A stretch of DNA of 64,000 nt from Macrostomum lignano (lineage: Eukaryota). The DNA is taken from positions 308,879 to 372,878 of the forward strand of contig NIVC01000625.1 of NCBI GenBank assembly GCA_002269645.1, read 5' to 3'. Under the pieces are notes generated by a model. The model did no database searches and was not told where the DNA came from. It saw only the letters and a list, made by a program, of their open reading frames with translations. Shown here piece after piece: positions 23,714-63,827 of the stretch (within the stretch, counting starts at the first letter, position 1; each line of letters opens with the position of its first letter). The translations under genes were made by a program, and so were the position numbers.

Positions 23714-23744
23714 AGCCTTCGATTGGTGTGTTTGGCATGAACTT

Positions 23745-25095: not shown

Positions 25096-25169
25096 AAGTA
25101 GTTTAAAAGTAGTAGTGTAAATTTTTTATTAAAAGCTTTTATTAAAGGACTAAATAAAAACACTTAGAT

Positions 25170-40900: not shown

Positions 40901-43164
40901 CTGTCTAATGGTGTCTCCCAACTGTCTAATGGTGTGTCTCCAACTGTCTAATGGGGTGTCTCCAACTGTCTAATGGTGTGTCTCCAACTGTCTAATGGTG
41001 TGTCTCCAACTGTCTAATGGGGTGTCTCCAACTGTCTAATAGTGTCTCCAGACTTCAACTGTCTAATGGGGTGTCTCCAACTGTCTAATGGTGTGTCTCC
41101 AACTGTCTAATGGGGTGTCTCCAACTGTCTAATGGTGTGTCTCCAACTGTCTAATGGGGTGTCTCCAACTGTCTAATGGGGTGTCTCCAACTGTCTAATG
41201 GGGTGTCTCCAACTGTCTAATGGGGTGTCTCCAACTGTCTAATGGTGTGTCTCCAACTGTCTAATGGTGTGTCTCCAACTGTCTAATGGTGTGTCTCCAA
41301 CTGTCTAATAGTGTCTCCAGACTCCAACTGTCTAATGGGGTGTCTCCAACTGTCTAATGGTGTGTCTCCAACTGTCTAATGGGGTGTCTCCAACTGTCTA
41401 ATGGTGTGTCTCCAACTGTCTAATGGTGTGTCTCCAACTGTCTAATGGTGTGTCTCCAACTGTCTAATAGTGTCTCCAGACTTCAACTGTCTAATGGGGT
41501 GTCTCCAACTGTCTAATGGTGTGTCTCCAACTGTCTAATGGGGTGTCTCCAACTGTCTAATGGGGTGTCTCCAACTGTCTAATGGGGTGTCTCCAACTGT
41601 CTAATGGTGTGTCTTCAACTGTCTAATGGTGTGTCTCCAACTGTCTAATAGTGTCTCCAGATTCCAACTGTCTAATGGTGTGTCTCCAACTGTCTAATGG
41701 GGTGTCTCCAACTGTCTAATGGTGTGTTTCCAACTGTCTAATGGTGTGTCTCCAACTGTCTAATGGTGTGTCTCCAACTGTCTAATGGTGTGTCTCCAAC
41801 TGTCTAATAGTGTCTCCAGACTCCAACTGTCTAATGGTGTGTCTCCAACTGTCTAATGGGGTGTCTCCAACTGTCTAATGGGGTGTCTCCAACTGTCTAA
41901 TGGGGTGTCTCCAACTGTCTAATGGGGTGTCTCCAACTGTCTAATGGTGTGTCTCCAACTGTCTAATGGTGTGTCTCCAACTGTCTAATGGTGTGTCTCC
42001 AACTGTCTAATAGTGTCTCCAGACTCCAACTGTCTAATGGGGTGTCTCCAACTGTCTAATGGTGTGTCTCCAACTGTCTAATGGGGTGTCTCAAACTGTC
42101 TAATGGGGTGTCTCCAACTGTCTAATGGTGTGTCTCCAACTGTCTAATGGTGTGTCTCCAACTGTCTAATAGTGTCTCCAGACTCCAACTGTCTAATGGG
42201 GTGTCTCCAACTGTCTAATGGTGTGTCTCCAACTGTCTAATGGTGTGTCTCCAACTGTCTAATGGTGTGTCTCCAACTGTCTAATGGTGTGTCTCCAACT
42301 GTCTAATGGTGTGTCTCCAACTGTCTAATAGTGTCTCCAGACTCCAACTGTCTAATGGGGTGTCTCCAACTGTCTAATGGTGTGTCTCCAACTGTCTAAT
42401 GGTGTGTCTCCAACTGTCTAATGGGGTGTCTCCAACTGTCTAATGGTGTGTCTCCAACTGTCTAATGGGGTGTCTCTAACTGTCTAATGAGGTCTCCCAC
42501 TGACTAATGGAATGCCTGGCCCTATCTAACGGGTACTTGAACCCCCATAAGACGGCTTGCAGCCGCTGAATTCGCAGTCTCGCGGCCTCACCTTATAGTA
42601 GGTCTGATCCTTGAAGTACTCCTGGTAGCAGTGCATCACCAGCCGAGTTCTGAGCGCCAACGCCAGCTGGCTCTCCAGAAAGCGGATCAAAGAATTGACA
42701 AAGGTGGCGGGCAGGGCCAGCAGCAGCCACTTGGCGATCTGCAGCACGAACCGCAGTACATTCCGCTGCACGATGGCTTTCACAATCCGGCCGTCCAGCT
42801 TGGCCACATAGACAGACAGGAAAGTCCTGGTGACAAGGGAGGTCGTGTGCAGCAGCAGGATGCCGAACTCCCGGCTCAGCAGGGAGGGCACGCAGATTCG
42901 CACCAGGCGAATCAGGGAACGAATGAAGGCCAAGTCGACTGTGGCTTTCGACGATTCGTCAGCCTGACTGCCGTCTGCGCCGTCTTTGCCGCCGCCGCCG
43001 CCGCCGCCTCTGTCGCGTTTCTGCCGCCTGCCAGTCAGCATGCGGAGCAGCTTGCGCAGGTGCAGCGACATGAGCAAGGCCCCGGCGGTCACCGCAACGC
43101 CGCGCTGATGCGCCCGAACGAAAGTGACGCCGCTGAGAACGAGCTTCGATGCGCTGGGTGCCAT
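37990..43164 (-). CDS. ABCD1: Peroxisomal ABC half-transporter, ABCD1/ABCD2-like, 4 exons, about 691 aa
   Basis: Exons 43164-42592, 40686-40102, 39626-39320, 38600-37990 with consistent phases. EAA-like motif ([15 protein letters not shown]), Walker [10 protein letters not shown], signature LSGGEKQR, and [14 protein letters not shown]. Assignment to ABCD1 versus ABCD2 is not resolvable by eye. Confidence 0.92.
39705..40020. repeat. 21-bp minisatellite, ABCD intron 2
   Basis: GGGATTCAG(A/G)TTAGAGATGCA. Confidence 0.92.
40800..42490. repeat. 22-bp minisatellite, ABCD intron 1
   Basis: CCAACTGTCTAATGG(T/G)GTGTCT. Confidence 0.95.
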
Positions 43165-46100
43165 GGCCGAGCTGGGGGGGGGGGGGTCTTCAACAGAAGT
43201 TTTTTCTTATCCCTGCCTGTCTCTCACACCGCCAGTTGGTTTGCAGCGACTGGAAAATTCAGATCAATAAAGTGCGCTCTTTAACGGGCTCGAATATTGT
43301 TTCACCGACCCCCCCCCCGTTATCGCCAGCTACTGATAGTGAGCGCACGGCTCGGGGCGGACAGGCGGTGACCTTCTTGTGAAGTTTCTGTTCTATCAGC
43401 TGATAGCAGCAGTGCATGCGCGCGCACAATAGTCAATTAGCGTTCAGTGAGAACTTGCAACTGTTTAACCTAGTTCTCAACTGACTCATCCTAAATAACT
43501 TCTCTTATTCTCATCTCTTGGTAGCTTTCACTGTCTATTTCTCTTCATCACAGCATTTAATTCAAATTAAATCATGAAAGTTTCTTGTTGCAGTTCTGTG
43601 TTGCGAAATTTGATATTTGGGTTAACAGGGCAACTCTTTTCCACTTATTCTAATTTCATATTTTTGAGTTAACAGCTTTGGGTTGCAGAAATGAAATATG
43701 AATTACAAGCATGTGGAAGTTAAGTTAAATGGCACTAAGTTTGAAATAGAGGGGGCATTAATGTGGAATTCAGGTTCTTCATTCAGGATGCCAAAATTAA
43801 GTCACACACATGACCTATTTTATAGGGATTCCTGTTGGTTTTTGGGTGCATATTGCACGCAACTTAATGTTTCTCACTCTCTTGCTTTTGTATAAAATTT
43901 TCCTATGGCTTAAACATACACATGTATATATATAACAAACAAATGTAGCCAATGAAACCTCTGACATTTTTAATCTAACAAAGAGCTTATAAGACTGACA
44001 AGACAATGAGTATATGTAAACAATATATTTACAAACAAATAGCTAGGTTCAATAAAGTAAAGTCTATTCTATTCTAGTAGAAAGATTGTATTTTTTAAAC
44101 TGTATCCTAGAATTGAATTTAGACCTTAAGTCTTAGATGAAATTTTGTATCTTAATTTTAGTAAAACCTAGGGCAAGGCCAAGTTTTTTTTAGGTTTTTT
44201 GTGATAAAGATACTACAAAATTGCATCTTAAAGTTGGACCTTAAATATAATTTCATATCTTAATGCTAGCAAAAAATGTATAAAACATAAGGTAGAATCC
44301 TATTAAATATTGTATTGGATTAAGTAGCCCTTTTTATAGAACTGCTTGGCATAGTTCTGTTAAATTTTAGCTTTGGCATGGCATAGAAAATAAGGCATGT
44401 TATGCTAGTGTGAAAAATCTAAATATTGCAATTAACACAAAAAATTAAGTATAAGCATAGTATAAGAATACTAAAATTTAAAAATAATGCAAAATGAATA
44501 CATAAACATTGTAGGCCTATATGTCTATTGTCTAACACTATAAAAAACTGATATATCATAATATAGGCCCTACCTAAAATTTATAGGCCTAGGCATCTAG
44601 TATGCATTGGGGCTTTTTTAAAGAAAGCAGGCCCTATGGTAAAAGCAAAATATTGATGTTAAGGGGAGGCTACAACACAAAAAGAACATTGATATAATAT
44701 TTTAGGCTTAGAGAAGCCTACATAGCCCCAATCCCAAATCTTATATATATGCCAAAAATTATAGTATACAATGGACTTAAAGAAACAATTGGCTTAAAAT
44801 ATTTAGCATACAGAATAATCTATTAAAAAATGCACTACAGAGCCAGCCTATGGCATAGCTATTGGTATACAAAAGACCAAAATGTCAGAATGCAAGAAAG
44901 GGTCTTATATTGTCATAATGCAAGGTCCTTTATTGTTGCAAATGCTTTTTTGATAATGTCCAGCCTATAGATCAAAAGTAAATTTTTGTTAGTGTAAATT
45001 GAATTTATGCGTTATGGTATAGGGGGTCATTTTTCTGGTATATTATAACAGATTTAAGAGTGTGGCTACATAGAGAATAAAAACTAGGCCTAAACTAAAG
45101 GAATTAAGTCTAATATAGTAACCATATTATATTATAATAACTATAAATATAGCAAGATTATTCTTATAATCAATGCATAAAACAAAGACACTTATACTTA
45201 GACTTAAGAATTTAAGATAACCATATGCTAGTGCCCCCCCCCAACAAAATTATTGGGTAGGCTTAGGCCCACCTTGTCCCTAGCTTTGCTATGCTTGTCT
45301 AAAAGACTAAAAGCTCTTAGTTTTAGCATGTTTTTTATAGTTTTTGAAAAGCATTCCAATAGGGATCAGGGATAGTAGAATAAAAAACAACTGATCAAAA
45401 TTTCATGCCAATATAAGCCAAGCCTCTTCTGGCTTTCTAGAGGAAGTCATAGCCAATATAGGTATAGGTAAAGTTGCTTGCTTGGCAAGTAAGATAAATA
45501 GGAAGGCGAAAATCAACATTAAATAAATTTAATTATGAAATAGGCTTTATTGTTTAGCATCACTTTTCTAGAATGTATCGCATTTGAAATTAGGCTATTT
45601 TGTTTGAACAAGTATAATATCAGTAATATTGTGAAATTAAATAAATTATGAAATTTTATTTGTTTTAAAACTTGCCAAAAGGAGTATAAATACACAAGCT
45701 ATTAGCAGGAGAAGAAACGACTTGCCTTGCCTTGCTTTGGGCTTATAATCTATTCTAGTATTTTGAATTGAAGCTTGATAAATACTTGCTGACTTAATTT
45801 AGAAGCACTAGAAACCCCAAGATTGGGAGAGTTCAAACTTCTCAGAAGAATGAGATAATCAGATCTAGAATCTGAGAGATCACTTTTAGAAGGCAGAAAA
45901 AATCCTAACACAGGGTAGAGAAGTCTAGACTTAGAATATGAGAATCCTGCCTCAGGGCAGAATACCCAGTTAGTAAGCTGTGACCCTCTGATTAGTCTAT
46001 GGATGATCAGGGTAGCAGCTGCAGCAGGAGCCGCAGTAGCTGACACCAGTAGGCAATAGCTGGATATTCTTTTGTTAAAACAGGAGCCACAGTAGCTGAC

Positions 46101-46527
46101 ACCATGGCAGCAGCAGCCGTAGCAGGAGCCACAGCGGCCGACACCATGGCAGGAGCCGCAGCAGCCAATACCATGGCAGCAACAGCCAACACCATGGCAG
46201 CAGTAGCTGACACCATGGCAGCAGCAGCTGCGGCAAGAGCCGCAACAGCTGACATCATGGCAGCAACAGCTGACACCATAGCAGCAGCAGCCTTGATGGA
46301 TGATACAGCTACTTTAGCATTGGCAGCAGTAGCCTTGGCAATTGCTAGTTTAGCGATGATTAATGTCACCATTATTGCCTTATAAGGACTTGGTCTGTCA
46401 GCTTAGGCAGACTTGTAGTGACCCGTTGCAGCGAGCCATCCATGGCCTGGAGCAGTAGGCCCCTACTTGATCAGAATTGCATATCTGCAACTTGATCAAC
46501 CACTGCCTTAGTGGTCAATCAATAAAA

Positions 46528-46822
46528 ACAAAATTTTGGGATGTAAATTCAATCAATATTTAAAGCACGCACATGTTTGTTGGTCCAAAAGTCAAAGTCA
46601 AAAGTGCATTCCCCCAACCTCAACACTCAACTCCAACACAGTGGCGTGGGTCCATGGGACATGTTCTCTGTATGTTCTGAGGGAGGGTGCACTGGATAGG
46701 CCTATACATTATATATTTCTAACTATATTGCTATCATTCCATCCCTGGACTTTGCCTCTTGACTTTTGAACCAACAAACATGTACTTTAAATATTGATTG
46801 AATTTACACCCCAAAATTTTGT
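46528..46822. mobile_element. Foldback/MITE-like element with TIRs of about 60 bp
   Basis: ACAAAATTTTGGGATGTAAATTCAATCAATATTTAAAG...CATGTTTGTTGGTCCAAAAGTCAA is mirrored at 46760-46822. No clear TSD. Confidence 0.7.
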
Positions 46823-47514
46823 ACTTATTTACTGCCAAACTCACTCATTTCTTTCGCTCAAAAATAAACCTGAAGATGCACAGTATCATGCAAAATGTGT
46901 CATTCAATTAGATTTATTTAATGTTTATTTTCGCCTTCCTATTCAATATAATATACCCTCTATTATCTATATAATAACTCTATAATAGGCCTAACTCTAT
47001 TTACCTATTATATGCCAACTTGAAAACTTCTAATTGCCAACCCAAATTTATAGTAGGCCTAAGCCCCTACAATAAATTTCTAGCATATCTTAGGCCTACA
47101 CGATCTCCAGTATGGATTTATTCTATATGACCTATCGATATAGTAATCAGTACTGGTGATCCCATAAAAAAGATCTTTGAAACTGTTGTAAAACTGTAAA
47201 ATTTACTATCGTCTATCGAAAGCCTCGACTGAAGATTTCCTAGAAATTCCAAAAAGTTGATTTCTTATTATAAAAACGTTAAAAAATAAATTTGTAACAT
47301 CGGAGTTCTTTATATCTTAAAAGCCTACACCATACTTAAAAACTGCACATTTTAGATAGATAAATTGCAACACACAGACAAACATCGCACCAGTTTTAGT
47401 ATTTAGAGGCTACACCACAAACAAACAAGTCACTCAAAGACATAACATGCGCATTTAATCTACTGTAAGTAGAAATACGATCATTTTATCGTATTTTGTG
47501 AAAAAACAGCCCCA

Positions 47515-47534
47515 TTTCTAGAAATTTCCAGAAT
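47515..47534 (+). promoter_or_regulatory. Perfect 4-unit heat-shock element, sHSP copy 1
   Basis: tTTCt aGAAa tTTCc aGAAt: alternating nGAAn pentamers. Confidence 0.9.
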
Positions 47535-47552
47535 CAAGTCAGTGACACAAGA

Positions 47553-47586
47553 CTTCTAGAAACTTCCAACCGCGCAGTCTATATAA
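47553..47586 (+). promoter_or_regulatory. 3-unit HSE plus TATA box, sHSP copy 1
   Basis: cTTCt aGAAa cTTCc (47553-47567) followed by TATATAA (47580-47586). Confidence 0.88.
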
Positions 47587-47707
47587 GCGCGACAGGCTGA
47601 TTCTCGAAGAGTCAAGTTGCAAAGCAAGCAAACAAGCCAATCGAAAGCAATCCAAGCAAACCAAGCAAAGCACTCGAAGCGTTCAACAATCAAGCGAATT
47701 CGCCACA

Positions 47708-48508
47708 ATGTCGCTCTGGATCGCGCCAAGCAACGTGTACACGCCGTTCTCGCACGCCCTGCCGCTTGCGGCAGCCATGAGCGAGCTGGACGACTGGCTG
47801 ACGCCCGAGTACGACCCGCTGGTGCAGCTGCTACGCCACCGGGGTCCGAGGCGACCTCGGCAGTGGAGCCGGACTGTCGACCTTCGCGGCTTCCCCCCGA
47901 AGGACGTGTCGGTGAAGCGAGAGGACCGGAAGGTGCGCGTGGTGGCTCGGCTCGAAAACGGCGAGGACTCGACGGAGGTGAAGCGGACGGTGGAGCTGCC
48001 GGAGGAGGTGGACGCTGAGAAGCTGAGCAGCGGCTTCACCCAGGACGGCATGCTGGTGCTGAAGGCGCCGTTCAAGGAGCAGCAGCTCAAGCAGCAGCAG
48101 CAGCAGCAGGACTCGGTGTGGGACGAGCTGCGCAGTCTGCTGCGAGGCGACCTGCAGTCCGGCCAGCTGGTGGAGGCCAGCGACGGCAGCAAGCGGTTCA
48201 AGGCGGAGCTGTCGGTGCGCGAGTTCAAGCCAGACGAGATCCGCATCAAGCAGCAGGGCGACTGCGTGCGAGTCGAGGCTGAGCACAAGGACGAGTCGAA
48301 CGGGCAGCGGATCCACAAGCGGCTGGAGAGAGAGTTCCAGCTGCCCGCCGGCACCAAGCTGGACCAGGTGGCCAGCAAGCTCAGCCAGGACGGCCGGCTC
48401 TGCATCGAGGCGCCGTTCGAGGCTCCGCCCGCCAAGGAGAAGCCGCAGCTCAAGGATGTCCCCATGGAGATCGACAAGCCTGCCGAGCTGCAGAATGGGG
48501 CTAAGTGA
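47708..48508 (+). CDS. Small heat-shock protein with two tandem alpha-crystallin domains (p40/Tsp36-like), intronless, copy 1
   Basis: Two ACD-like repeats: VDLRGFPPKDVSVK...LSSGFTQDGMLVLKAP and LSVREFKPDEIRIK...REFQLP...SKLSQDGRLCIEAP. HSEs and a TATA box lie upstream. Confidence 0.92.
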   Translation: MSLWIAPSNVYTPFSHALPLAAAMSELDDWLTPEYDPLVQLLRHRGPRRPRQWSRTVDLRGFPPKDVSVKREDRKVRVVARLENGEDSTEVKRTVELPEEVDAEKLSSGFTQDGMLVLKAPFKEQQLKQQQQQQDSVWDELRSLLRGDLQSGQLVEASDGSKRFKAELSVREFKPDEIRIKQQGDCVRVEAEHKDESNGQRIHKRLEREFQLPAGTKLDQVASKLSQDGRLCIEAPFEAPPAKEKPQLKDVPMEIDKPAELQNGAK

Positions 48509-49043
48509 TGTGCCGGTTGTCATGGCAACTGCCTTAACTCGAAATGACAGTTGAGAACAGTGGCATGTACTTTGGGTCTCACTGACCTGCATGTACATGT
48601 ATGAGTATGCTTTGAGCTAAGTTGATAGCTTTTATTGTTATACTGCGATCTATTACATTGCCTACCTGTATTATGAATGACTGTCTGATTTAGTAGCTCA
48701 TTAGTACTGCTTGCATTTACTCCAGATTTACAGGTTGCACAGCAGCCAGCACTGCATTCGCATTGAAATCATTGTAAACTGCTGGCATTGAAATCATTAA
48801 CAATATACTGCAGGCATTCGCCCTGATCTTGAGGGCATTGGTCGTTTACTTTACCTTAATAAGAACTGTTCCTGCATTTTGTTCTGACTTTATTATTCAC
48901 ATTAGGCGAAGAACGGGGCAAAGCCAGTGAAGGCTTCAATTTGCACCATTTTACTGACGCGCCTGTGCATGGGGCTTAACGTCATGAAGAAAAACTTACC
49001 TTGGTGTTTAGAAAATCAAGTCAAAAGAGAGATGAAGCATGAG

Positions 49044-49772
49044 GCATCTCATTGATCCCCCTTCCTTAGCATTGGCATCTCATTGATCCCCCTTCCTTAG
49101 CATTGGCATCTCATTGATCCCCCTTCCTTAGCATTGGCATCTCATTGATCCCCCTTGAGCATTGGCATCTCATTGATTCCCATTGAGCATTGGCATCTCA
49201 TTGACCCCCCCTTCCTTAGCATTGGCATCTCATTGATCCCCCTTGAGCATTGGCATCTCATTGATCCCCCTTGAGCATTGGCATCTCATTGATCCCCCTT
49301 GAGCATTGGCATCTCATTGATTCCCCTTGAGCATTGCATCTCATTGATCCCCCTTGAGCATTGGCATCTCATTGATCCCCCTTGAGCATTGGCATCTCAT
49401 TGATCCCCCTTGAGCATTGGCATCTCATTGACCCCCCCTTCCTTAGCATTGGCATCTCATTGATCCCCCTTGAGCATTGGCATCTCATTGATTCCCATTG
49501 AGCATTGGCATCTCATTGATCCCCCTTGAGCATTGGCATCTCATTGATCCCCCTTGAGCATTGGCATCTCATTGATCCCCCTTGAGCATTGGCATCTCAT
49601 TGACCCCCCCTTCCTTAGCATTGGCATCTCATTGATCCCCCTTGAGCATTGGCATCTCATTGATTCCCATTGAGCATTGGCATCTCATTGATCCCCCTTG
49701 AGCATTGGCATCTCATTGATCCCCCTTGAGCATTGGCATCTCATTGATCCCCCTTCCTTAGCATTGGCATCT
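49044..49772. repeat. About 28-32-bp minisatellite, left copy
   Basis: GAGCATTGGCATCTCATTGATCCCCCTT variants. Confidence 0.93.
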
Positions 49773-50074
49773 CAGTCAAAAGAGTCAAAAGTCAAAGTCA
49801 AAAGAGAGATGTAGCATTAAAAAGTTGAAGCCGGAGAGATAAAATTTAAATTGAATACAAAGCAAAGCTGGGTTGCAAAAAGGCTCTCCAGACACAAATA
49901 ATGTCACATTTTTGTGGAAAAGCATGTGTCACCAGCCAGGGCAAAATTCTATAGGCTGTGCATATGTCTAAACTTATATCCTTCTAGATTAAAGTTGTGA
50001 CCAAATTGTACCTCGTAACAAATAAAGGATATAAAATATACTAATACTGCCTTCTAATGTTTAGCAATACTAAA

Positions 50075-50452
50075 TGCCAATGCTCAAGGGGAATCAATGA
50101 GATGCCAATGCTCAAGGGGAATCAATGAGATGCCAATGCTCAAGGGGGATCAATGAGATGCAATGCTCAAGGGGAATCAATGAGATGCCAATGCTCAAGG
50201 GGGATCAATGAGATGCCAATGCTCAAGGGGGATCAATGAGATGCCAATGCTCAAGGGGGATCAATGAGATGCCAATGCTAAGGAAGGGGGGTCAATGAGA
50301 TGCCAATGCTCAATGGGAATCAATGAGATGCCAATGCTCAAGGGGGATCAATGAGATGCCAATGCTAAGGAAGGGGGATCAATGAGATGCCAATGCTAAG
50401 GAAGGGGGATCAATGAGATGCCAATGCTAAGGAAGGGGGATCAATGAGATGC
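50075..50452. repeat. Same minisatellite inverted, right copy
   Basis: AAGGGGGATCAATGAGATGCCAATGCTC variants. Confidence 0.93.
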
Positions 50453-50987
50453 CTCATGCTTCATCTCTCTTTTGACTTGATTTTCTAAACACCAAGGTAA
50501 GTTTTTCTTCATGACGTTAAGCCCCATGCACAGGCGCGTCAGTAAAATGGTGCAAATTGAAGCCTTCACTGGCTTTGCCCCGTTCTTCGCCTAATGTGAA
50601 TAATAAAGTCAGAACAAAATGCAGGAACAGTTCTTATTAAGGTAAAGTAAACGACCAATGCCCTCAAGATCAGGGCGAATGCCTGCAGTATATTGTTAAT
50701 GATTTCAATGCCAGCAGTTTACAATGATTTCAATGCGAATGCAGTGCTGGCTGCTGTGCAACCTGTAAATCTGGAGTAAATGCAAGCAGTACTAATGAGC
50801 TACTAAATCAGACAGTCATTCATAATACAGGTGGGCAATGTACTAGATCGCAGTATAACAATAAAAGCTATCAACTTAGCTCAAAGCATACTCATACATG
50901 TACATGCAGGTCAGTGAGACCCAAAGTACATGCCACTGTTCTCAACTGTCATTTCGAGTTAAGGCAGTTGCCATGACAACCGGCACA

Positions 50988-51788
50988 TCACTTAGCCCCA
51001 TTCTGCAGCTCGGCAGGCTTGTCGATCTCCATGGGGACATCCTTGAGCTGCGGCTTCTCCTTGGCGGGCGGAGCCTCGAACGGCGCCTCGATGCAGAGCC
51101 GGCCGTCCTGGCTGAGCTTGCTGGCCACCTGGTCCAGCTTGGTGCCGGCGGGCAGCTGGAACTCTCTCTCCAGCCGCTTGTGGATCCGCTGCCCGTTCGA
51201 CTCGTCCTTGTGCTCAGCCTCGACTCGCACGCAGTCGCCCTGCTGCTTGATGCGGATCTCGTCTGGCTTGAACTCGCGCACCGACAGCTCCGCCTTGAAC
51301 CGCTTGCTGCCGTCGCTGGCCTCCACCAGCTGGCCGGACTGCAGGTCGCCTCGCAGCAGACTGCGCAGCTCGTCCCACACCGAGTCCTGCTGCTGCTGCT
51401 GCTGCTTGAGCTGCTGCTCCTTGAACGGCGCCTTCAGCACCAGCATGCCGTCCTGGGTGAAGCCGCTGCTCAGCTTCTCAGCGTCCACCTCCTCCGGCAG
51501 CTCCACCGTCCGCTTCACCTCCGTCGAGTCCTCGCCGTTTTCGAGCCGAGCCACCACGCGCACCTTCCGGTCCTCTCGCTTCACCGACACGTCCTTCGGG
51601 GGGAAGCCGCGAAGGTCGACAGTCCGGCTCCACTGCCGAGGTCGCCTCGGACCCCGGTGGCGTAGCAGCTGCACCAGCGGGTCGTACTCGGGCGTCAGCC
51701 AGTCGTCCAGCTCGCTCATGGCTGCCGCAAGCGGCAGGGCGTGCGAGAACGGCGTGTACACGTTGCTTGGCGCGATCCAGAGCGACAT
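50988..51788 (-). CDS. Small heat-shock protein, copy 2 (protein identical to copy 1, inverted)
   Basis: The ORF-track translation is identical to 47708..48508, and the gene sits in the mirror arm of the palindrome. Confidence 0.92.
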   Translation of the reverse strand: MSLWIAPSNVYTPFSHALPLAAAMSELDDWLTPEYDPLVQLLRHRGPRRPRQWSRTVDLRGFPPKDVSVKREDRKVRVVARLENGEDSTEVKRTVELPEEVDAEKLSSGFTQDGMLVLKAPFKEQQLKQQQQQQDSVWDELRSLLRGDLQSGQLVEASDGSKRFKAELSVREFKPDEIRIKQQGDCVRVEAEHKDESNGQRIHKRLEREFQLPAGTKLDQVASKLSQDGRLCIEAPFEAPPAKEKPQLKDVPMEIDKPAELQNGAK

Positions 51789-51909
51789 TGTGGCGAATTC
51801 GCTTGATTGTTGAACGCTTCGAGTGCTTTGCTTGGTTTGCTTGGATTGCTTTCGATTGGCTTGTTTGCTTGCTTTGCAACTTGACTCTTCGAGAATCAGC
51901 CTGTCGCGC

Positions 51910-51981
51910 TTATATAGACTGCGCGGTTGGAAGTTTCTAGAAGTCTTGTGTCACTGACTTGATTCTGGAAATTTCTAGAAA
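51910..51981 (-). promoter_or_regulatory. TATA box, 3-unit HSE and 4-unit HSE, sHSP copy 2
   Basis: Mirror images at 51910-51916, 51929-51943 and 51962-51981. Confidence 0.88.
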
Positions 51982-52367
51982 TGGGGCTGTTTTTTCACAA
52001 AATACGATAAAATGATCGTATTTCTACTTACAGTAGATTAAATGCGCATGTTGTTTTTGACTTTTCTATTTATTATGGAGTTTTGTATAATTAAATTTTC
52101 TTCTGTATACTTTAATATAAAAGACCAAAATTTTGAGAAAGTTTAATAAGACTGCGATACGATGAATGTCTGTTGTTTTTTTAACATAGATTATTCAAGT
52201 TGTCCAATCGTTTCTGGGTAACTTCTAGACGCCTTTCCGAACCCCGTTCTCTCCGAGCGGACTCAAAATTCTCAGCTGCAGCTACTGCAGCCACCCTCCC
52301 AGTCCTTGGTGCGTACTTTCTTTACAGCATTTTTAAAGAACTGTTTTGAAAATTATAGAAATTAACT

Positions 52368-52387
52368 TTTCAGGAACTTTCTTGAAA
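52368..52387. promoter_or_regulatory. Additional perfect 4-unit HSE outside the palindrome arm
   Basis: tTTCa gGAAc tTTCt tGAAa. Confidence 0.75.
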
Positions 52388-53351
52388 TAGGATAGTTTTC
52401 TCGGGAAATACGATTAAATGATCGCATTTCTACTTACAGTAGAGGAAATATACAATGCGCTTATTTTTCTTTTGCGGGTGATTATCATACAAATTTTGGG
52501 AAAACGAATAGTGCGAAATTTTGGCAAAGGCTTCGAAAAGTACACTTTGATGAGGAATATTAATCCTAGTACGACAGATTGGCGGGTGCAAATGAGGCAT
52601 TCACCAGTCCAACGCATGCCACGCGTACGAGTTAAACAAGAGCGTAATTTATTTAGCATATAAACTACAGCAACCCGAGCTTCACACATGCAACAGATGC
52701 AGCAAATGTTTATCACCAAAGATTGACAATCTTAATGCACGTTTCCGAATTTCCTGTATCGATTTAAACAAAATGCTAAGCGCGAATTTAAAATATATCA
52801 GCGGCTTAAGCTGAGTCATGTTGCGGAGGATAATAAACCGGCTGTTGATCGCGCTTGAGCGATTTTATCAACCTCACAGACGGTGGCGGCCTGTCAGTGC
52901 GCGTGGCTGTCTTCTGTGAGCTCCTCATTATGGGAAATCGGGATGAAATGCAGATTTGCAGGGCCGTGAGGTGCAATTACCAATGCAGCTGGGGGCTTAT
53001 TGATTCAGCGCTGAAGGCGCCGCACTTCCCTTTCATTTAGCAAGTAGCTGATCATCTGACAGACAGCACAGGCTGGCTGCCCCATTGCTAAGCATGCCGT
53101 TCTTCCCCAGGCTCCCGGATGCACGCATCGAGAGCGTGTCAGCCGCTGGCGTGACGAGATGCGAATCAGCCAAGCCTTGCTGCAGTCCCAACTCGTTAAA
53201 AAAACAAAGAACAACACGAAAGGCTGATGGAAGCAGTTTTTATTGGGTAAATTATTTGAAAAGTTTACAGTAAGATTAACAATGTCTCTTCTTTGCTCAT
53301 TAAAAAGTCAATTAATTATCTGAGTAAGCAAGTCGGAAGAAATCTGGTAAC

Positions 53352-56300
53352 TTATTTTCGCGTCGGCGTTGACTTCTCAACGGGGCTCTTGTGAGACGAG
53401 CCCACCTTGGGCGAGCGGCCCTTTTTTGCGCGCTTGCCGCCGTCCTCCTTCTCGGCGGCAGTCTCGGCTTGCCCGGACGGGGCCCGCTTGGCAAACAGGC
53501 TGTCCAGCGAGTTGTGCCGCCTCAGCCCCATGAGGTGGCGGCAGCGGTCTGAGATGCCGTGGTAGGCCTGCTCAGCCAGCCGCTTGCCGCGCAGATGATC
53601 GTCTCTGACTACGAACACTTTGAACTCCGTCTCGGTGAAGACGAGGGCCACCTTCCCGGCGTGGCCGACAACCAGCTGGAAGTCCTTTTCTTCGTCATCC
53701 TCTCCGGAAGGAGTCTGACCCTGCTGCCTCTTCCGCAACCTGTGCAGGATGGACCTGCCGAGGACGGTGCCGCTGCCCGCAGAACCGTCGTTGCGAAGGA
53801 TGGTCAGCTCGTTCTGCGCCTTGTCCAGCACGACGATGAGCGAGCCGTCTCCGATGAACCGGGGAATCGTGTCCAGCTGCTGAGCGTCGGCACCATCCGG
53901 GGACAGGCTGAGCTGCTTGAGGGCGTCTCCACGGGTGGTGTCGTACAGGCGCAAGCTCTTGTCGATTCCGACCTTGCCGTCCCTAGTGATGTCCCGGATG
54001 TAGTCCTGCGTTGAGAAGGAGGAGATGACACAGGCTTTCTGAATGTCTACCTTAGCGTACTGGATCTCGTTCTCCTTGATGACGAATTGGAGCAGCACGA
54101 TGTTGGGACTTTCGTCCGGCACTAGCATGCCCTTGATCAGGGGGATTCTGGCGTACTCGTCGATTCCCTTCAACAGACTCGCCACATCAACCTCGTGCTG
54201 GACTCTCTCGAACAGCTTGCCCCCGAGCGTCTTGACGAAGCGGCCGTTTCTGCCGCAACAGATCACCAAGCGGCTGTTGGACTCAACAAGTTTTGACGCG
54301 ATGATCCTGTGCTCGAGATACGTCTGCTGAAGGAACTGGCCGGTCTGCAGGTCGTACGCGCTCAAAATGTCATTCGCTTCCGGCGACTCCCGCGTCCTGC
54401 TGGCGTGGTCCGGCTTCAGCGTGAGCAGCAGTCGGCTGGTGACGTGGCTCACGGCTTCTCCGGTGATGGAAATCTGGCTTACCAACTGCCCCGTGTCCGT
54501 GTCGTGCACCCGAATCACCTTCTGACCATACGGATCGCCCGGGCTTGGCCGCGGCTTTGCTGGCCTTCCCACTGTTGGCGTGGCCTCGATGTAGAGACCG
54601 CCGGTGAAGTAGTTCCTGTTCGGCAGCTCAGGCTTCCGCAGGTTTGCTCCCCTTTCCCGCGCCACGGCGCCGCCTCGGGCATCTGGCTGGCTTGAAAAGT
54701 CTTCAGTTGCTGACGCGCGCTTTGGCTTCTTGGCTTCAAAAATGAGAAGCAGCTTCTCTCCGTCCGGAGTGATCTTGCGCTGCACTGGAAAGCTGCCGAT
54801 AACCTCGGATTTGTGCGTCATGTCGTAGCTCAGGTAGCTGCCATTGTCCAGATTGAGGAAGGTGAAGTCGCAAAGATTCGGGTTGTTGTCATACAGAATG
54901 TTCAAGTCGGTGTGGTAGTAGGGGCTGTTCAACGCCGTGCCGTAGTAGGCAACCTGGGCCTCCACCTGAGTTGGACGATCACTGGGTGACTTCAGACTGC
55001 TTAGAGTGACCTGATTCGGCGTGACCAACAGGGTGAGTCGCTCCTTCACTACGTAGACATCTTCGATCCGGCTTCCAATACTGACCTGCTGGACGAGCTC
55101 TCCAGAGCTGCAGTTGAACAGGCGGACGGTGGTGTCGCTCTCGCTGTGCAGCACGAACTGGTACACGTGCGCGCCGTCCACGGAGAACCGGGTTACTGCG
55201 TTGGGCACCTGCGGCAACACGGCCTGAACAGTTTTCTGACTCAATGACCAGATTGTCTCCACTGTGCGAATGTCGTTGATGTTGTACTCAACAATGAGAT
55301 ACTTCTCATCGATAGACAGCATCATGTTGGTCACGGATGTGTGAGACTTGTATTTAGCGAACAGGCTCTTAAACTCGGGTCCAAGGTTTTCTTGCCTCTC
55401 TAAGCTGAACTCCATGGAAGGCGTCAGCTTCTTGATGTCGCGCTTGATGGCCTGGGCGATGTCGTAGCGCAAGACGAGTCCGAGGTTTTTGCAGCCAACG
55501 AACACAAACTCGGTGCGCGCGTTGGACAGCAGGCAGGTGGAATAGAGGTGGCAGGACAGAACGCAAACCTGGTCTCCTGTTGTTGTGTTGAGCAAGCGCA
55601 GGTTCGTCTCAACCTTACTTGAGTCGGTCTTCCAAGCTTTTGGCGCGATAATGTACTTGTCGTTGGGCGTGATCAGGAACGGCCAGTGGAAGTTCTTGAA
55701 CTCCAGGGCCGGTGACGCATTCGAGTGCTGGTAGACGCGCACTTTGCCATCCACGCGAAGCACAACGTAGCTTTTGGTCAGGTAAACAATTTTAGGTTTC
55801 TCCGAGGCTCTGAACTCCAGCTTGTTGTCAAAGGTGGCGGTGCTGAGGTTCAGAAACAAGTAGCCGCAGGTGTCCCTGTCAGAGACCCGCTTTTTATAGT
55901 AAAGCAGCATCTGCTCGTCAGTCTGCGGCATGTAGGTGATGCTCAAAAACTTGCTGCCATCGTGCTCGCCTAAGTTGAGGATCTGCGACTTCGTGGCGGA
56001 CTTCGCGTCCCACACGTAGAGGAACAGCTCGCCGTTGATGAGCAGCAGCGTGGCCAGGAATCGGTTGTCCGGCGACAGGGCGCACTGGATCGGAACGCTT
56101 GCGGGCCCCGGAAGTGGCACCTTGGTTTCGTCCATCTCCACTGGCGGAAATGAAGGCACAACCGGGCAGAGGCAGTTCACGCGGCTTCCCTGACTGTCGA
56201 TCTGCTGCAGCAGACCGGTGATGAGAACCTGTGAGCCGGCCAGGTGGCAGAGACGGCCGGACAGTTCGATTCCCATGAGGCTGAGGTCTTTCTCGATTAT

Positions 56301-59300
56301 TGGAGCGAGCAACCTGAGCAGAGAAATCAGCACCTCAACCTCCTGGTTTGCTCGAACCTCGTAGTTCTGGCGCAGAAAGTAGAACTCGGAGATCAAATCG
56401 TTTACGCTGAACGCGTTGAGCTTGGCGTACAAGTAATCAAAGTTGAAGAGGCAGGAGCGGTACAGGTCGGACACTTTCTCCCCCTTGAGGAGACTGTAAG
56501 TGAGCTCGCTCAGCTTCCTGTTGTTGCTCACGGAAAGATCGCGTCCACTCCACATGAAGGACTGGTACAGAGCCACTCGGTCCACGTTGACGCTTTTGGA
56601 CTCATCGCCGTCTGTCTGAGACTTTTCAAAAAGCGGCTTCGCCTTGGCCCCGGCCCAGCGACCGCTCCAGTACTCGGCGAGCTGCTGGCTGACCTGCACG
56701 CCGAACTCCTTGTTGAGCTGGTAGTAGTCTGTCACAGCTGAGCGGAGGACATCGTGTGCCCACGTGTACACCAGTCGGTCATCCAGCTGCACCCGGATCA
56801 GGTAGAGCTCGACGTCGTCCAGAAATGCCGTGATGATCCCCATGGGGACTCGGTAGAAGTTCGAGTGCTTGGCGTCGAACCCGGAGTCTACAGCGACAGA
56901 ATTGTCCAGGCTGAGGACATCCTGCAGCTCCGGGAGCGACAGGCCAAAGCGCGAGCAGCTGATGTACGACAGAATGCTCTTCACTACCCACAGGCCGTGC
57001 TTCTGCTCAAGCTGCTCCAGGCGTTTCATAAAGACGAGCTTGACTCGGTCGGGCAGCTTGTCTTCGCGGCAGGGCAGGACATCGGCCAGGATGATTGTGT
57101 ACAGCGGATACGAGTTGTTCTGCAGCAGCGAGTTCGCCAGCTCGCGGTTCTTGTCGCCGATGGCTTTTCCTTTGGCCGCCAGGATGCTGGGAAACTCCTT
57201 GATGGCCGCGGATGGGACGACGCCGGTCAGCGTCAGGGAGCTGCTGTCGTCAAAGCGGCGCTTGAAATTGGTGAGGAAACTTTCGCTGCCGGCCGTCACC
57301 AGCACTTTGACGTTGGCCGGCAGCCGGTGCGGCAGCCAGCGGAACAGCTCGGTGTGGCTCTGCGGGTACAGAAGGTCGATGTCGTCCAGCACGATCAGCA
57401 GCTGCTTCTTGAAGCCGGGAAGCTGCAACGCCCGCGTGAAGTCGTACACGACCTGGGCGTACTCGCAGCTAGGCGCGAACTGTCTCCTGGCGTGGAAGTA
57501 GATTTCCTGCGTGACGCTGGCGATGATCTGCTGCAGCGTGCAGGACAGAGTGGTTCGCCCGCAGCAGCGCTTGATGATCACCAGATTGTCGTCAGTCATC
57601 TGGTCAATCAGCTGCTTGATGATGGCGGTCTTGCCTGAGCCGTGGTCGCCGTAAAGAAGGCCGGGCAGCTGAGACTTGGAGGCCACGTAGTTCTGCAGGA
57701 TTTTGAGCTCCCGGTCTCGGCTGAACACGGGCGGACGGACCCGCTGGCCTGCCAAAACGGCGCTGTGCGTCTCGATCTCCATCGGCAGCGGCAAGGCCAG
57801 GAACTCGTGTCTGCCGCAGAATTTCATCACGTGATTCTTCAGCTTTTCAAAGGTCTGCTTGGCAAAGATGGTCAGGTAGGTTGTGGCCTTCATGTCCTTG
57901 CTGGCCAGCGGGGTCTCGGCCAGCTTGCTGACCACGTTCGACTTGTTCCGCTGCACCAGCTTGTACTCGGACAGCATGGCGGACGAGATGGAGAATCGAA
58001 CGTAGTTCTCCTTGGGCAGGCGCTGCAGGAACTCCTCGCGCAGCTGCTGCACCTTCTCGTTGCTCGACTGGCTGAATCGACCGAATGCGTCCAGGTCGAG
58101 GAACTGCTCCTTCAGCTCCGGGTCCTCGGTGGCGCCCCATTCGCGGACGTCTTTCAGCACTCGGGCAAAGGCGATGCACTGATCAATGGGTTTCTTGTCC
58201 GTCCTGAGGTACTTCAGGTAGTGCTCAACGGCTGCAAGTCAGGGTTCAGGGTTCAGTTTTTTAGTTAGATTTTAGTTAGAGGCAGGTCGCTGTGTGCACC
58301 CTGGCGCACTTTAGGCGACATTGTCGCACAACCGGCGAGAGGCATTGCTGCCCATTCCGCCGACCCCCCTGAGCAGGCACACAAGCGCGCGGATACGTAC
58401 GCAGTCATACGCAAAGGCACACACTCGCGCAGGAGTGTACAGCGGCCCTAACTTTATTTATCGTTAGGAATGTGCACTTCACTGTGCCTTGGGGGTTGGC
58501 CATCAAGGCCGTTAATTGCACTCGAAATCGAGACAGCTCAGCTAGGCCCCCGTTCGCGATTCGGCTTACGAGGAACGAAAAGAGCGTCGACCTGGTCCTG
58601 CGTCAGCGTTCCGTCGCCCACCGCCTCGCTGGCGACCTGCGGCAGTCGCTGGCGAAGGCTCTCGGCCAGGTCGGGCGCCGCGCCCTGCAGTTTGTAGCTC
58701 AGGTCCGACTGCTTGGCGTACAGCTTCTGGAAGCTCGTCCACAGCGGGTCATTTTTCTTTTTCAACCCGTTGAGAAAGGCGGCGAACTCCGGCTCGCTCA
58801 GCTGGGGCGGGAGCTTTGAGTTGCCGAACTTCTCGCCCACGAGCACCTACGATAGGGAAGTGGGCAGGCAGTGCAGTTGTGAGTAGGCGAGCTGCAAGCA
58901 CAGAGTAGTGCTGAGGAATCCCTGTCTGCTCAAGAGTTGATCCTGATCACCCTAGAACGAGTCCTGATCACCAATAACCTGTCCCGATTACCGCACGAGT
59001 CCCAATTACCCAAGAACCGGTCCCAATTACCCAAGAACCCGTCCCAATTACCCAAGAACCGGTCCCGATTACCCAAGCACCTGTCCCGATTACCCAAGCA
59101 CCAGTCCCGATTACCCAAGAACCGGTCCCGATTACCCAAGCACCAGTCCCGATTACCCAAGCACCAGTCCCGATTACCCAAGAACCGGTCCCGATTACCC
59201 AAGCACCAGTCCCGATTACCCAAGAACCGGTCCCGATTACCCAAGAACCGGTCCCGATTACCCAAGAACCGGTCCCGATTACCCAAGCACCAGTCTCGAT

Positions 59301-60947: not shown

Positions 60948-61280
60948 AGTGGAATCCCTCAGTGGAATCCCCTCGATGAAATCCCCTCAATGGAATCCCT
61001 CAATGGAATCCCTCAATGGAATCCCTCAATGGAATCCCTCAATGGAATCCCTCAGTGGAATCCCCTCAATGGAATCCCTCAGTGGAATCCCTCAATGGAA
61101 TCCCCTCAATGGAATCCCTCAATGGAATCCCTCAATGGAATCCCTCAATGGAATCCCCTCAATGGAATCCCTCAATGGAATCCCACAATGGAGTCCCTCA
61201 GTGTAATCCCTCAATGGAATCCTTCAGTGGAATCCCCTCTGTGGAATTCCCTCAGTGGAATCCCCTCTGTGGAATCCCAG
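60948..61280. repeat. 13/14-bp minisatellite
   Basis: GGAATCCCTCAAT variants. Confidence 0.9.
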
Positions 61281-63813: not shown

Positions 63814-63827
63814 TTGGGAGATGCGGT

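What the first reader, a model, noticed from the sequence alone, without database searches (positions are those of the whole stretch)
47444..52052. Tail-to-tail palindrome of two identical sHSP genes that folds back inside a minisatellite
Seen: two arms of about 2 kb, each with promoter, HSEs, CDS, 3' region and minisatellite, are near-perfect reverse complements. I noticed only two substitutions, both 3' of the CDS. The order of minisatellite variants matches between arms, including a single-G variant (CATTGCATC near 49330 and 50160). The right arm then ends inside the array. The unique spacer of about 300 bp starts with stuttered AGTCAAAAG pieces and a near re-copy of the arm sequence AGTCAAAAGAGAGATG(A/T)AGCAT (49019 versus 49795). 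Inference: the duplication arose by template switching at the minisatellite and is recent or kept homogeneous by arm-to-arm gene conversion, as known for inverted Hsp70 pairs.
Basis: partly seen in the sequence, partly recalled or inferred. Interest (0 to 1): 0.7.

Follow-up and report, generated by a model that had tools for sequence, protein, structure and literature searches.

The report
Conserved heat-shock gene palindrome, flatworm
Two nearly identical copies of a heat-inducible small heat-shock protein gene sit tail to tail in the flatworm Macrostomum lignano. The pair is an old palindrome kept uniform by copying between its arms, a known kind of arrangement for heat-shock genes.

Summary
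Arms 47444-49423 and 50074-52052 are reverse complements, with 4 substitutions and 1 homopolymer indel in 1980 nt. Each arm holds a complete heat-shock unit (HSEs, TATA box, intron-less 266-codon ORF, 3' region) plus a 28-32-nt minisatellite. A 299-nt unique spacer lies between the arrays.

The window is the last 64 kb of Macrostomum lignano contig NIVC01000625.1. The gene is an unannotated two-alpha-crystallin-domain sHSP, 65% identical to the heat-inducible Mlig-hsp20.

The decisive evidence comes from two sister contigs of this neopolyploid genome. Contig NIVC01000758.1 has the same palindrome with all four junctions at identical positions. Its arms differ from the window's at 23-29 of 1599 sites, whereas arms within a contig differ at only 2 (window) or 12 (contig 758). 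There are 19 sites where both arms of one contig differ from both arms of the other, and 0 sites following arm position. So the palindrome is real, older than the subgenome split, and homogenised by arm-to-arm gene conversion.

Contig NIVC01000108.1 lost the right arm through a deletion running from the minisatellite into a piggyBac-like element. The arrays are hypervariable (10-91 units). Origin by template switching is only weakly supported.

This is a new member of a known kind (C. elegans hsp16, Drosophila hsp70).

The parts
47444..49423 (+). Left arm of the palindrome: promoter, 5' leader, CDS, 3' region and the first 13 minisatellite units
   Evidence: It runs without a break into the left flank, as in contigs 108 and 758.
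50074..52052 (-). Right arm, the reverse complement of the left arm (4 substitutions, 1 indel)
   Evidence: The same outer and inner junctions are present in contig 758.
47460..47472 (+). Conserved upstream motif CTACTGTAAGTAG; its mirror copy is at 52024-52036
   Evidence: Read from the sequence. Related CTACTnnnAGTAG motifs lie upstream of the HSEs of Mlig-hsp20 (L001) and of the L004 gene.
47516..47533 (+). Distal four-unit heat-shock element TTCtaGAAatTTCcaGAA; mirror copy at 51963-51980
47554..47566 (+). Proximal three-unit heat-shock element TTCtaGAAacTTC; mirror copy at 51930-51942
47580..47587 (+). TATA box TATATAAG, 128 nt before the ATG; mirror copy at 51909-51916
47708..48508 (+). 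Left CDS: a 266-aa sHSP with two alpha-crystallin domains (residues 50-131 and 159-247)
50988..51788 (-). Right CDS, identical in sequence to the left one
49019..49040 (+). 22-mer AGTCAAAAGAGAGATGAAGCAT next to the array; mirror copy at 50456-50477
49041..49774 (+). Left minisatellite: 25 units of 27-32 nt, variant order aaabcdbbbebbbdbcbbbdbcbba
49775..49817 (+). Junction J1: stuttered GTCAAAAG pieces and a 21/22 direct recopy of the 22-mer (49796-49817)
   Evidence: Also present in contig 758.
49775..50073 (.). Unique spacer (299 nt) between the two arrays
   Evidence: No homology to nearby sequence. Present in contig 758 with a short deletion.
50074..50455 (-). Right minisatellite: 13 units, variant order aaabcfbbbebgh
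52345..52472 (-). Orphan promoter fragment, 81% like arm positions 47436-47569. It has the CTACT..AGTAG motif and a perfect four-unit HSE (52369-52386), but no gene follows it.
   Evidence: Conserved in contig 758.
52414..52417 (.). TTAA site. It is empty here and occupied by a piggyBac-like element in contig 108.

Best explanation
This is a genuine, evolutionarily old palindrome in Macrostomum lignano, made of two complete heat-shock transcription units facing each other tail to tail. Each unit encodes an intron-less sHSP with two alpha-crystallin domains, a paralogue of Mlig-hsp20. Each unit carries a conserved upstream motif, a four-unit HSE, a three-unit HSE and a TATA box. Each is followed by about 535 nt of 3' sequence and a hypervariable 28-32-nt minisatellite, and a spacer of about 300 nt separates the two arrays.

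Shown: the palindrome predates the divergence of at least two of the subgenome copies of this locus, and its arms evolve in concert. The arms are far more alike within a chromosome copy than matching arms are between copies. This requires repeated non-reciprocal exchange between arms, that is, gene conversion. In the window's copy the last homogenising event was recent. It covered the whole arm up to its outer edge and reached about 11-13 units into the array.

Inferred: both copies are induced by HSF on heat shock, so the pair doubles the dose of the gene. Conversion together with purifying selection keeps both copies intact. The spacer and the non-pairing arrays keep the palindrome stable. 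The minisatellite is a recurrent site of breakage and repair. The founding event was an inverted duplication whose junction J1 carries a templated-insertion scar.
For: 1. The palindrome and its parts are confirmed.

2. The window is M. lignano contig NIVC01000625.1: its NWD1-like neighbour gene matches at 100%, and L010 is identical to the window.

3. Contig NIVC01000758.1 (L011) has the same architecture, with J0, J1, J2 and J3 at identical positions. It clearly comes from a different molecule. Its arrays have 20 and 91 units, against 25 and 13 here. It has an insertion of about 985 bp in the left flank and a deletion in the spacer. It is 1.4-2.4% diverged.

4. Over the 1599 unique arm positions the difference counts are: WL-WR 2, GL-GR 12, W-G 23-29. 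Site patterns are 19 concerted, 0 positional and 0 cross.

5. The single-copy contig 108 shares the contig-758 state at 17 of the 19 concerted sites, so these differences are real. It also shares four left-arm-specific variants with GL.

6. All five CDS copies are intact. W versus GR shows 9 nucleotide differences and only 1 amino-acid difference.

7. The promoter layout matches that of Mlig-hsp20, whose promoter is more than 100-fold heat-inducible and drives a heat-shock reporter (PMC6371448). The published reverse primer matches L001 at the ATG.

8. Pfam HSP20 hits both halves of the protein, and the best PDB hit is 2BOL.
Against: No reads were available. Some arm identity in the window could therefore be inflated by read correction or polishing across near-identical arms, and Mlig_3_7 is known to contain errors and chimeric scaffolds (PMC10733133). 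No expression data were examined for this gene, and it is absent from the deposited annotations, so heat induction is inferred from the promoter alone. Conversion is inferred from site patterns, not observed. The origin mechanism is unresolved: J2 and J3 show no microhomology, and the array single strands fold worse than shuffled sequence, so hairpin-based fragility is not supported.
Confidence: 0.85

Rival explanations
1. A young, one-off inverted duplication in this chromosome copy, as in the reader's first alternative. The arms would be alike simply because too little time has passed, with no gene conversion.
For: The arms differ at only 2 of 1599 unique positions, and the first 11-13 array units are in the same order. 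Contig 108 has a single copy.
Against: Contig 758 carries the same palindrome with identical junctions J0-J3, yet it is 1.4-1.8% diverged from the window in both arms. All 19 sites informative among the four arms follow the concerted pattern. Contig 108 is nested with contig 758 (8-12 differences against 23-25 to the window). It shares left-arm-specific variants with contig 758's left arm, so its single copy is a secondary loss.
Confidence: 0.03
2. An assembly artefact: a fold-back or chimeric long read, or a misjoin of subgenome copies in Mlig_3_7, created a palindrome that does not exist in the animal.
For: Mlig_3_7 is a Canu assembly of PacBio RSII reads from a repeat-rich neopolyploid. It has known errors, and 36% of its length lies in chimeric scaffolds. 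Divergence from contig 108 steps from 1-4% to 0.3% or less exactly at the palindrome. Contig 635 breaks 870 bp to the right of it.
Against: The same structure was assembled independently on contig 758 from clearly different molecules. The palindrome has a 299-nt unique spacer, unequal arrays and unique flanks on both sides. No SMRTbell adapter 15-mer occurs in the window. A fold-back read would give arms running to the read end with no return to a unique flank. An inversion chimera would put the same end of the spacer next to both arrays, which is not what is seen.
Confidence: 0.04
3. The palindrome is real and old, but the near-identity of the window's arms (2 differences) is partly produced by consensus or polishing across arms. 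Real arm divergence would then be nearer that of contig 758 (0.75%) or higher.
For: Short reads cannot be placed uniquely within arms 99% or more identical. Pilon polishing used randomly placed multi-mapping reads.
Against: The same pipeline kept 12 arm differences in contig 758, four of which are confirmed by the single-copy contig 108. It also kept W-type and G-type alleles apart at 19-29 sites. Artificial homogenisation would have to pick the W-specific allele on both arms at all 19 sites.
Confidence: 0.1
4. On origin only: the founding inverted duplication arose by replication template switching (FoSTeS/MMBIR-like) that landed in the minisatellite. The alternative is end joining of a broken and copied fragment.
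For: Both inner ends of the arms lie in the array. J1 carries stuttered GTCAAAAG pieces and a 21/22 templated recopy of a 22-mer from 750 bp upstream, the kind of scar left by repeated priming. An independent deletion in contig 108 also starts in the array.
Against: J2 and J3 have no microhomology, although the pre-duplication sequence is unknown. J1 is ancestral and may be an unrelated repair scar. The array strands show no hairpin potential. No copy with the unduplicated state was found, since contig 108 is a secondary deletion.
Confidence: 0.35

Closest known systems
C. elegans hsp16-1/hsp16-48 locus (Russnak & Candido 1985, cited in PMC3966223)
   Same: sHSP genes with HSE promoters lie in two arms of about 1.9 kb forming an inverted repeat. 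Arm identity is essentially 100%, a unique spacer of a few hundred bp separates the arms (416 bp there, 299 bp here), and the flanks are unrelated. Gene conversion is invoked there to explain the identity.
   Different: Each C. elegans arm holds a divergent pair of two genes; each arm here holds one gene with two alpha-crystallin domains plus a minisatellite. In C. elegans conversion was argued from the diverged flanks. Here it is tested against matching arms on sister subgenome contigs. The original paper could not be opened.
Drosophila Hsp70Aa/Ab and Hsp70Ba/Bb pairs (PMC3924832; Bettencourt & Feder 2002, cited there)
   Same: These are heat-inducible chaperone genes in mirror-image pairs. 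Paralogues are more alike within a species than orthologues are between species, which is attributed to ectopic gene conversion.
   Different: The gene family differs (Hsp70). From general knowledge, not checked here, the Drosophila 87A pair is divergently rather than convergently oriented. No minisatellite sits at the centre.
Sex-chromosome palindromes with arm-to-arm gene conversion (PMC3723533, PMC8981503, bioRxiv 10.1101/800185; abstracts)
   Same: Arm identity is 99% or more and is maintained by intrachromosomal conversion. The palindromes are conserved across lineages while the arms stay alike, and the spacers are unique.
   Different: Those arms are 10 kb to Mb long, on sex chromosomes, and hold testis-expressed genes. 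This palindrome has 2-kb arms and holds a stress gene. Its chromosomal and subgenome assignment was not determined.
Mlig-hsp20 (Mlig005128), the heat-shock reporter gene of M. lignano (PMC6371448)
   Same: Same species and the same two-domain sHSP type (65-69% amino-acid identity). The promoter layout is the same: an upstream CTACT..AGTAG motif, a four-unit HSE and a three-unit HSE about 35 nt apart.
   Different: Mlig-hsp20 is a single gene on each of its three contigs, with no inverted partner within 10 kb and no such minisatellite. Its induction has been measured; that of the window gene has not.
Tsp36 of Taenia saginata (PDB 2BOL) and other flatworm sHSPs with two alpha-crystallin domains
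   Same: It is the best solved-structure match (E = 5e-12). The alignment runs from the end of the first domain through the linker and the second domain, and both halves hit Pfam HSP20.
   Different: Sequence similarity is low. The window protein is shorter (266 versus 314 aa) and has a poly-Q linker. Chaperone activity has not been tested.

Membership tests
Small heat-shock proteins, flatworm type with two alpha-crystallin domains | Two HSP20/alpha-crystallin domains in one polypeptide | tested here: met
   PF00011 hits residues 50-131 (E = 1.3e-9) and 159-247 (E = 4.5e-15) when the two halves are scanned separately. The best PDB hit is 2BOL.
Small heat-shock proteins, flatworm type with two alpha-crystallin domains | ATP-independent holdase activity and oligomer formation | not testable with these tools
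   This needs purified protein.
HSF-regulated heat-shock genes | Arrays of three or more alternating nGAAn units close upstream of a TATA box | tested here: met
   A four-unit and a three-unit HSE lie at -192 and -154, and the TATA box at -128. All 8 trimeric matches in the 64 kb lie in the promoters or the orphan fragment, against 0.7 expected.
HSF-regulated heat-shock genes | Transcript induced by heat | not tested
   No expression data were accessible for this unannotated gene. Induction is shown only for the paralogue Mlig-hsp20.
Palindromes maintained by arm-to-arm gene conversion | Two inverted arms with a unique spacer and unrelated flanks | tested here: met
Palindromes maintained by arm-to-arm gene conversion | The structure is shared by diverged lineages, shown by identical junctions | tested here: met
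   J0-J3 are identical in contigs 625 and 758.
Palindromes maintained by arm-to-arm gene conversion | Arms are more alike within a lineage than matching arms are between lineages | tested here: met
   There are 2 and 12 differences within contigs against 23-29 between them. Site patterns are 19 concerted and 0 positional.
Palindromes maintained by arm-to-arm gene conversion | Conversion events or tracts seen directly in pedigrees or populations | not testable with these tools
   This needs resequencing of lines or pedigrees.
Inverted duplications made by template switching or fold-back (FoSTeS/MMBIR) | Microhomology at the novel junctions | tested here: inconclusive
   No shared bases are seen at J2 or J3 when the arm continuation is compared with the flank. 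The pre-duplication sequence is unknown.
Inverted duplications made by template switching or fold-back (FoSTeS/MMBIR) | Templated insertions at a junction | tested here: met
   J1 has stuttered GTCAAAAG pieces and a 21/22 recopy of the 22-mer from 49019-49040. It is shared with contig 758. The link to the founding event is inferred.
Assembly artefact (fold-back read or chimeric join) | The structure lacks independent support, and the arms run to a contig or read end or flank an adapter | tested here: not met
   A second contig has the same structure. Both flanks are unique, and no adapter 15-mer is present.

The most novel reading that the evidence does not exclude
The G5/C5-periodic minisatellite sits between two convergent genes that are strongly induced by stress. 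It may be where heat-shock transcription, including read-through, collides with replication and causes breaks. If so, stress itself would drive array turnover, arm-to-arm conversion and occasional arm loss. The palindrome would then be a self-repairing, stress-coupled gene pair, and convergent read-through could also yield double-stranded RNA that feeds back on expression.
Probability: 0.1. Interest if true: 0.6.

Novelty: new member of a known kind. Interest (0 to 1): 0.38.

Why it matters
The locus is a clean, small example of concerted evolution in a palindrome outside sex chromosomes. It lies in the genome of a neopolyploid flatworm whose subgenome copies serve as built-in outgroups. Three states of one locus are available side by side: freshly homogenised arms, arms drifting apart from their outer edge, and one arm deleted. 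This could be used to estimate conversion rate and tract length relative to subgenome divergence.

There are also practical points for the M. lignano community. An intact, conserved sHSP gene with a full heat-shock promoter is missing from the deposited annotations in all five copies. It is a second candidate heat-inducible promoter beside Mlig-hsp20. Because it is present in five near-identical copies, any knock-out or knock-down design has to take that into account.

Tried and rejected
- **Synteny with the Mlig-hsp20 loci (L001-L003).** Only the CDS and low-complexity repeats match, so these are paralogous loci. They have no inverted partner within 10 kb.
- **Exact-sequence look-up of the window protein.** It is not on record.
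- **Contig 108 as the 'empty site'.** Rejected. Its single copy is a secondary deletion from the array into a piggyBac-like element, so it does not show the ancestral state.
- **piggyBac-mediated origin of the palindrome.** Rejected, because J0-J3 lack TTAA.
- **Hairpin-prone minisatellite.** Both strands fold worse than shuffled sequence, with z-scores of +5.0 and +3.3. G-quadruplex or i-motif potential could not be assessed.
- **Residual homology.** None was found for the 292 nt between the right arm and the orphan promoter, for the spacer, or for the outer flanks; all scores fall within the shuffle range. There is therefore no sign of an older, larger palindrome beyond the orphan fragment.
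- **SMRTbell adapter.** Absent from the window.
- **Rfam.** No hit in the window.
- **Bacterial promoter/terminator scan.** Irrelevant for a eukaryote.
- **Russnak & Candido 1985.** The paper could not be opened.
- **Contig 635 (L012).** It starts 870 bp to the right of the palindrome and is uninformative.

Full report
**Observation.** The window contains one large inverted repeat. Ungapped, the arms are 47444-49210 / 50286-52052 (1767 nt, 100%) and 49206-49423 / 50074-50291 (218 nt, 99%). A gapped alignment joins them into 47444-49423 versus 52052-50074. It shows four substitutions: 48653 T/G and 48663 T/C in the 3' region, and 49377 and 49405 C/T in array units 12 and 13. It also shows one C7/C6 indel. 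Identity stops abruptly at 47443/47444 and at 52052/52053. Each arm holds an identical 266-codon ORF (47708-48508 +, 50988-51788 -). A minisatellite of 27-32-nt units follows each gene, with 25 units on the left (49041-49774) and 13 on the right (50074-50455). The variant order is the same over the first 13 units apart from the small differences listed above, and it includes the 27-nt single-G unit. The unique spacer is 49775-50073. It opens with GTCAAAAGA GTCAAAAG TCAAAG and a 21/22 recopy (49796-49817) of the 22-mer that precedes each array (49019-49040; 50456-50477 on the minus strand).

**Source and gene.** The neighbouring 1602-codon ORF (53352-58160, minus strand) is 100% identical to Macrostomum lignano BOX15_Mlig011309g1, an NWD1-like NACHT protein. 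Locus L010 of contig NIVC01000625.1 is identical to window 43352-64000, and the window ends at the contig end. The palindrome gene is a small heat-shock protein. Pfam HSP20 hits residues 50-131 and 159-247. The best solved-structure match is 2BOL, the two-domain Tsp36 of Taenia saginata. Only two proteins in the 5.8-billion-cluster collection are related to it: a 75% match from unnamed sequencing runs, and at 65% BOX15_Mlig005128g1. Mlig005128 is Mlig-hsp20, whose transcript rises more than 100-fold at 35 C and whose promoter drives the hsp20::mScarlet heat sensor (PMC6371448). The published reverse primer matches L001 at its ATG. The window protein itself is on record nowhere. No near-identical protein was found either, so the gene is unannotated in all its copies.

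**Promoter.** All eight matches to a trimeric HSE in the 64 kb (0.7 expected) fall in the two arms or in one further spot. Each arm has a four-unit HSE at -192, a three-unit HSE at -154 and TATATAAG at -128. An inverted-repeat motif, CTACTGTAAGTAG, lies about 45 nt further upstream. The same layout, including a CTACTnnnAGTAG motif, is found upstream of Mlig-hsp20 and of the 75%-identical gene on L004. The arm's outer edge lies 16 nt upstream of that motif, so each arm is a complete regulatory and coding unit. Heat induction is inferred from this, not measured.

**Sister contigs.** M. lignano is a neopolyploid with three subgenomes that differ at 1.4-2.4% of sites. Mlig_3_7 is a Canu/PacBio assembly with substantial redundancy and known errors (PMC5730564 and PMC10733133). 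The NWD1-like protein and its cluster members led to three more contigs that carry this locus.

- *Contig NIVC01000108.1 (L009, 'H').* It has one copy of the gene in left-arm orientation and runs without a break through the left junction. Its 10-unit array is fused to 1.1 kb of a truncated piggyBac-type transposase (PF13843, E = 6e-38). The 5' end of that element abuts a TTAA that is unoccupied in the window (52414-52417). The spacer, the right arm and 52053-52413 are missing.
- *Contig NIVC01000635.1 (L012).* It begins at the equivalent of 52921 and is uninformative.
- *Contig NIVC01000758.1 (L011, 'G').* It carries the same palindrome, with arms at 18196-19789 / 23537-25130 in its own coordinates. 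The left flank/arm junction (J0), the array/stutter junction with the 22-mer recopy (J1), the spacer/array junction (J2) and the arm/right-flank junction (J3) are at exactly the same positions as in the window. G is plainly a different molecule. Its arrays have 20 and 91 units in an unrelated order. Its spacer has a short deletion, its left flank has an insertion of about 985 bp, and substitutions run at 0.4-3% along the locus.

**Concerted evolution.** I aligned the 1599 unique arm positions (47444-49042) of the window's arms (WL, WR), G's arms (GL, GR) and H.

| Comparison | Differences |
|---|---|
| WL-WR | 2 |
| GL-GR | 12 |
| WL-GL | 29 |
| WR-GR | 23 |
| WL-GR | 25 |
| WR-GL | 27 |
| H-GL | 8 |
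| H-GR | 12 |
| H-W (either arm) | 23-25 |

 Among variable sites, 19 have the pattern (WL=WR) differing from (GL=GR). None has the positional pattern (WL=GL) differing from (WR=GR), and none has the cross pattern. Because the junctions show that the palindrome formed once, before W and G separated, arms evolving independently would differ at least as much as W differs from G. They differ 2- to 12-fold less, and every informative site is concerted. This requires non-reciprocal exchange between arms after the split.

H has no second arm that could confuse an assembler. It carries the G state at 17 of the 19 sites, so these are real lineage differences. H also shares four variants with GL that GR lacks (47551, 48980, 48984, 49042), which fits H being the left arm of a former palindrome. 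H therefore lost its right arm, and its deletion begins in the array. At the window's two 3' differences, H, GL and GR all carry the right-arm state, so the left arm's T and T are new and not yet converted. In G, 7 of the 12 arm differences lie in the outermost 130 nt, so its arms are diverging from the outer edge inwards. In W the arms are identical up to the last base.

**The arrays.** Unit number and order differ completely between G's two arms (20 versus 91 units), between contigs, and in H (10 units). The array therefore turns over much faster than the unique sequence. The shared order in the window's arms is thus best read as a recent conversion that ran from the unique arm some 11-13 units into the array. 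It is not the footprint of the original duplication breakpoint. Both arms end in arrays at the old junctions J1 and J2.

**Origin.** Three independent rearrangement end points lie in this array: J1, J2 and H's deletion. J1 carries a stutter plus a templated 22-mer, the kind of scar left by repeated priming during repair synthesis. Beyond that, the template-switching model cannot be tested here. J2 and J3 show no microhomology when the arm's continuation is compared with the flank. No copy preserves the unduplicated state. The array strands fold worse than shuffled sequence, so hairpins are not the reason for fragility. TTAA is absent from the junctions, so the piggyBac-like element is not implicated in the founding event.

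**Artefact.** A fold-back read would give arms running to a read end around an adapter. Here there is a 299-nt unique spacer, unequal arrays, unique flanks on both sides and no adapter 15-mer. An inversion chimera would put the same end of the spacer next to both arrays, which is not the case. Above all, the structure was assembled twice from diverged molecules. What cannot be excluded without reads is some inflation of arm identity by polishing. Against this, the same pipeline preserved 12 arm differences in G. A caution remains: divergence between the window and H steps from 0.7-4% left of the palindrome to 0.3% or less to its right. This means either exchange between subgenome copies or a switch of subgenome within a contig at this repeat.

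**Function (inferred).** On heat shock, HSF should bind both promoters and induce both convergent copies, which doubles the dose. All five CDS copies are intact. W and GR differ at 9 nucleotides but at only 1 amino acid, so the protein is under purifying selection. Conversion between arms spreads or removes new variants, so the two copies are effectively selected as one. The spacer, together with the fact that the arrays do not pair in register, should protect the palindrome from the instability typical of long perfect palindromes (general knowledge).

**Comparison with known cases and verdict.**
- The closest precedent is the C. elegans hsp16-1/hsp16-48 locus: two identical 1.9-kb modules in inverted orientation, 416 bp apart, with gene conversion proposed (PMC3966223).
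- The Drosophila Hsp70 pairs show the same pattern of within-species similarity (PMC3924832).
- Sex-chromosome palindromes are the best-studied case of arm-to-arm conversion.
- No paper in the held library combines Macrostomum with palindromes or gene conversion.

This is therefore a new member of a known kind. It is well supported, modest in surprise, and useful as a compact system and as an annotation fix.

Noticed in passing
window 52345-52472 (minus strand): An orphan promoter fragment, 81% identical to arm positions 47436-47569. It has the CTACTGTAAGTAG motif and a perfect four-unit HSE (52369-52386), but no gene follows it. It is conserved in contig 758 and is cut at its TTAA by the piggyBac-like element in contig 108. 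The 292 nt between it and the right arm match nothing nearby. Its origin is unexplained; it may be a relic of an earlier duplication, or it may act as an extra upstream HSE for the right copy.
   Followed up: partly
L009 17518-18616 (contig NIVC01000108.1); insertion site = window 52414-52417: A truncated piggyBac-type transposase gene (PF13843). Its 5' end lies at a TTAA, and its interior is fused directly to the sHSP minisatellite. This marks a deletion that removed the spacer, the right arm and 361 bp of flank.
   Followed up: yes
window 39965-49320 versus 52414-64000, compared with L009, L011 and L012: Divergence from contig 108 is 0.7-4% to the left of the palindrome and 0-0.3% to the right, falling to zero beyond 56 kb. 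Contig 758 differs on both sides. Contig 635 is 99.8% identical from 52921 onward. Either the subgenome copies are mosaics with an exchange boundary at the palindrome, or a contig switches subgenome there.
   Followed up: partly
window 47708-48508 and 50988-51788; L009; L011: This intact and conserved sHSP gene has no counterpart among deposited M. lignano proteins for any of its five copies. The annotation submitted with the genome excluded transcripts that overlap repeat annotations (PMC5730564), which may be why.
   Followed up: partly
window 47460-47472 / 52024-52036; L001 about 9830; L004 about 605: A short inverted-repeat motif, CTACTnnnAGTAG(AAATA), lies about 45-55 nt upstream of the distal HSE in three diverged sHSP promoters. 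It is a candidate binding site of unknown factor.
   Followed up: no
L011 25258-26241 (equivalent to window about 47266): An insertion of about 985 bp, found only in contig 758, lies 180 bp upstream of the left arm. It is GC-rich and was not identified.
   Followed up: no
L005-L008 (Logan contigs of runs SRR31628435, SRR31628393, SRR31628436 and SRR31628425): Four independent short-read contigs of the 75%-identical gene all stop exactly 8 nt after its stop codon. This suggests a branch or repeat boundary there in that unnamed species, possibly another duplicated arrangement.
   Followed up: no
L001 16083-17742: A 655-nt inverted repeat (99%, with a 350-nt spacer) lies 5-7 kb downstream of Mlig-hsp20 on one of its three contigs only.
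   Followed up: no
window 40847-42487, 46122-46292, 58941-59367: These are tandem-repeat tracts. The first and third give ladders of offset matches against the sister contigs, and the third lies inside the NWD1-like ORF. The second has 21-, 27- and 63-nt periods and lies in overlapping Ala-rich ORFs at 46007-46385.
   Followed up: no
window 48653 and 48663: The only two arm differences in unique sequence lie 10 nt apart. Both are changes to T on the left arm. Such clustering suggests a single mutational or repair event, or a local consensus error.
   Followed up: partly
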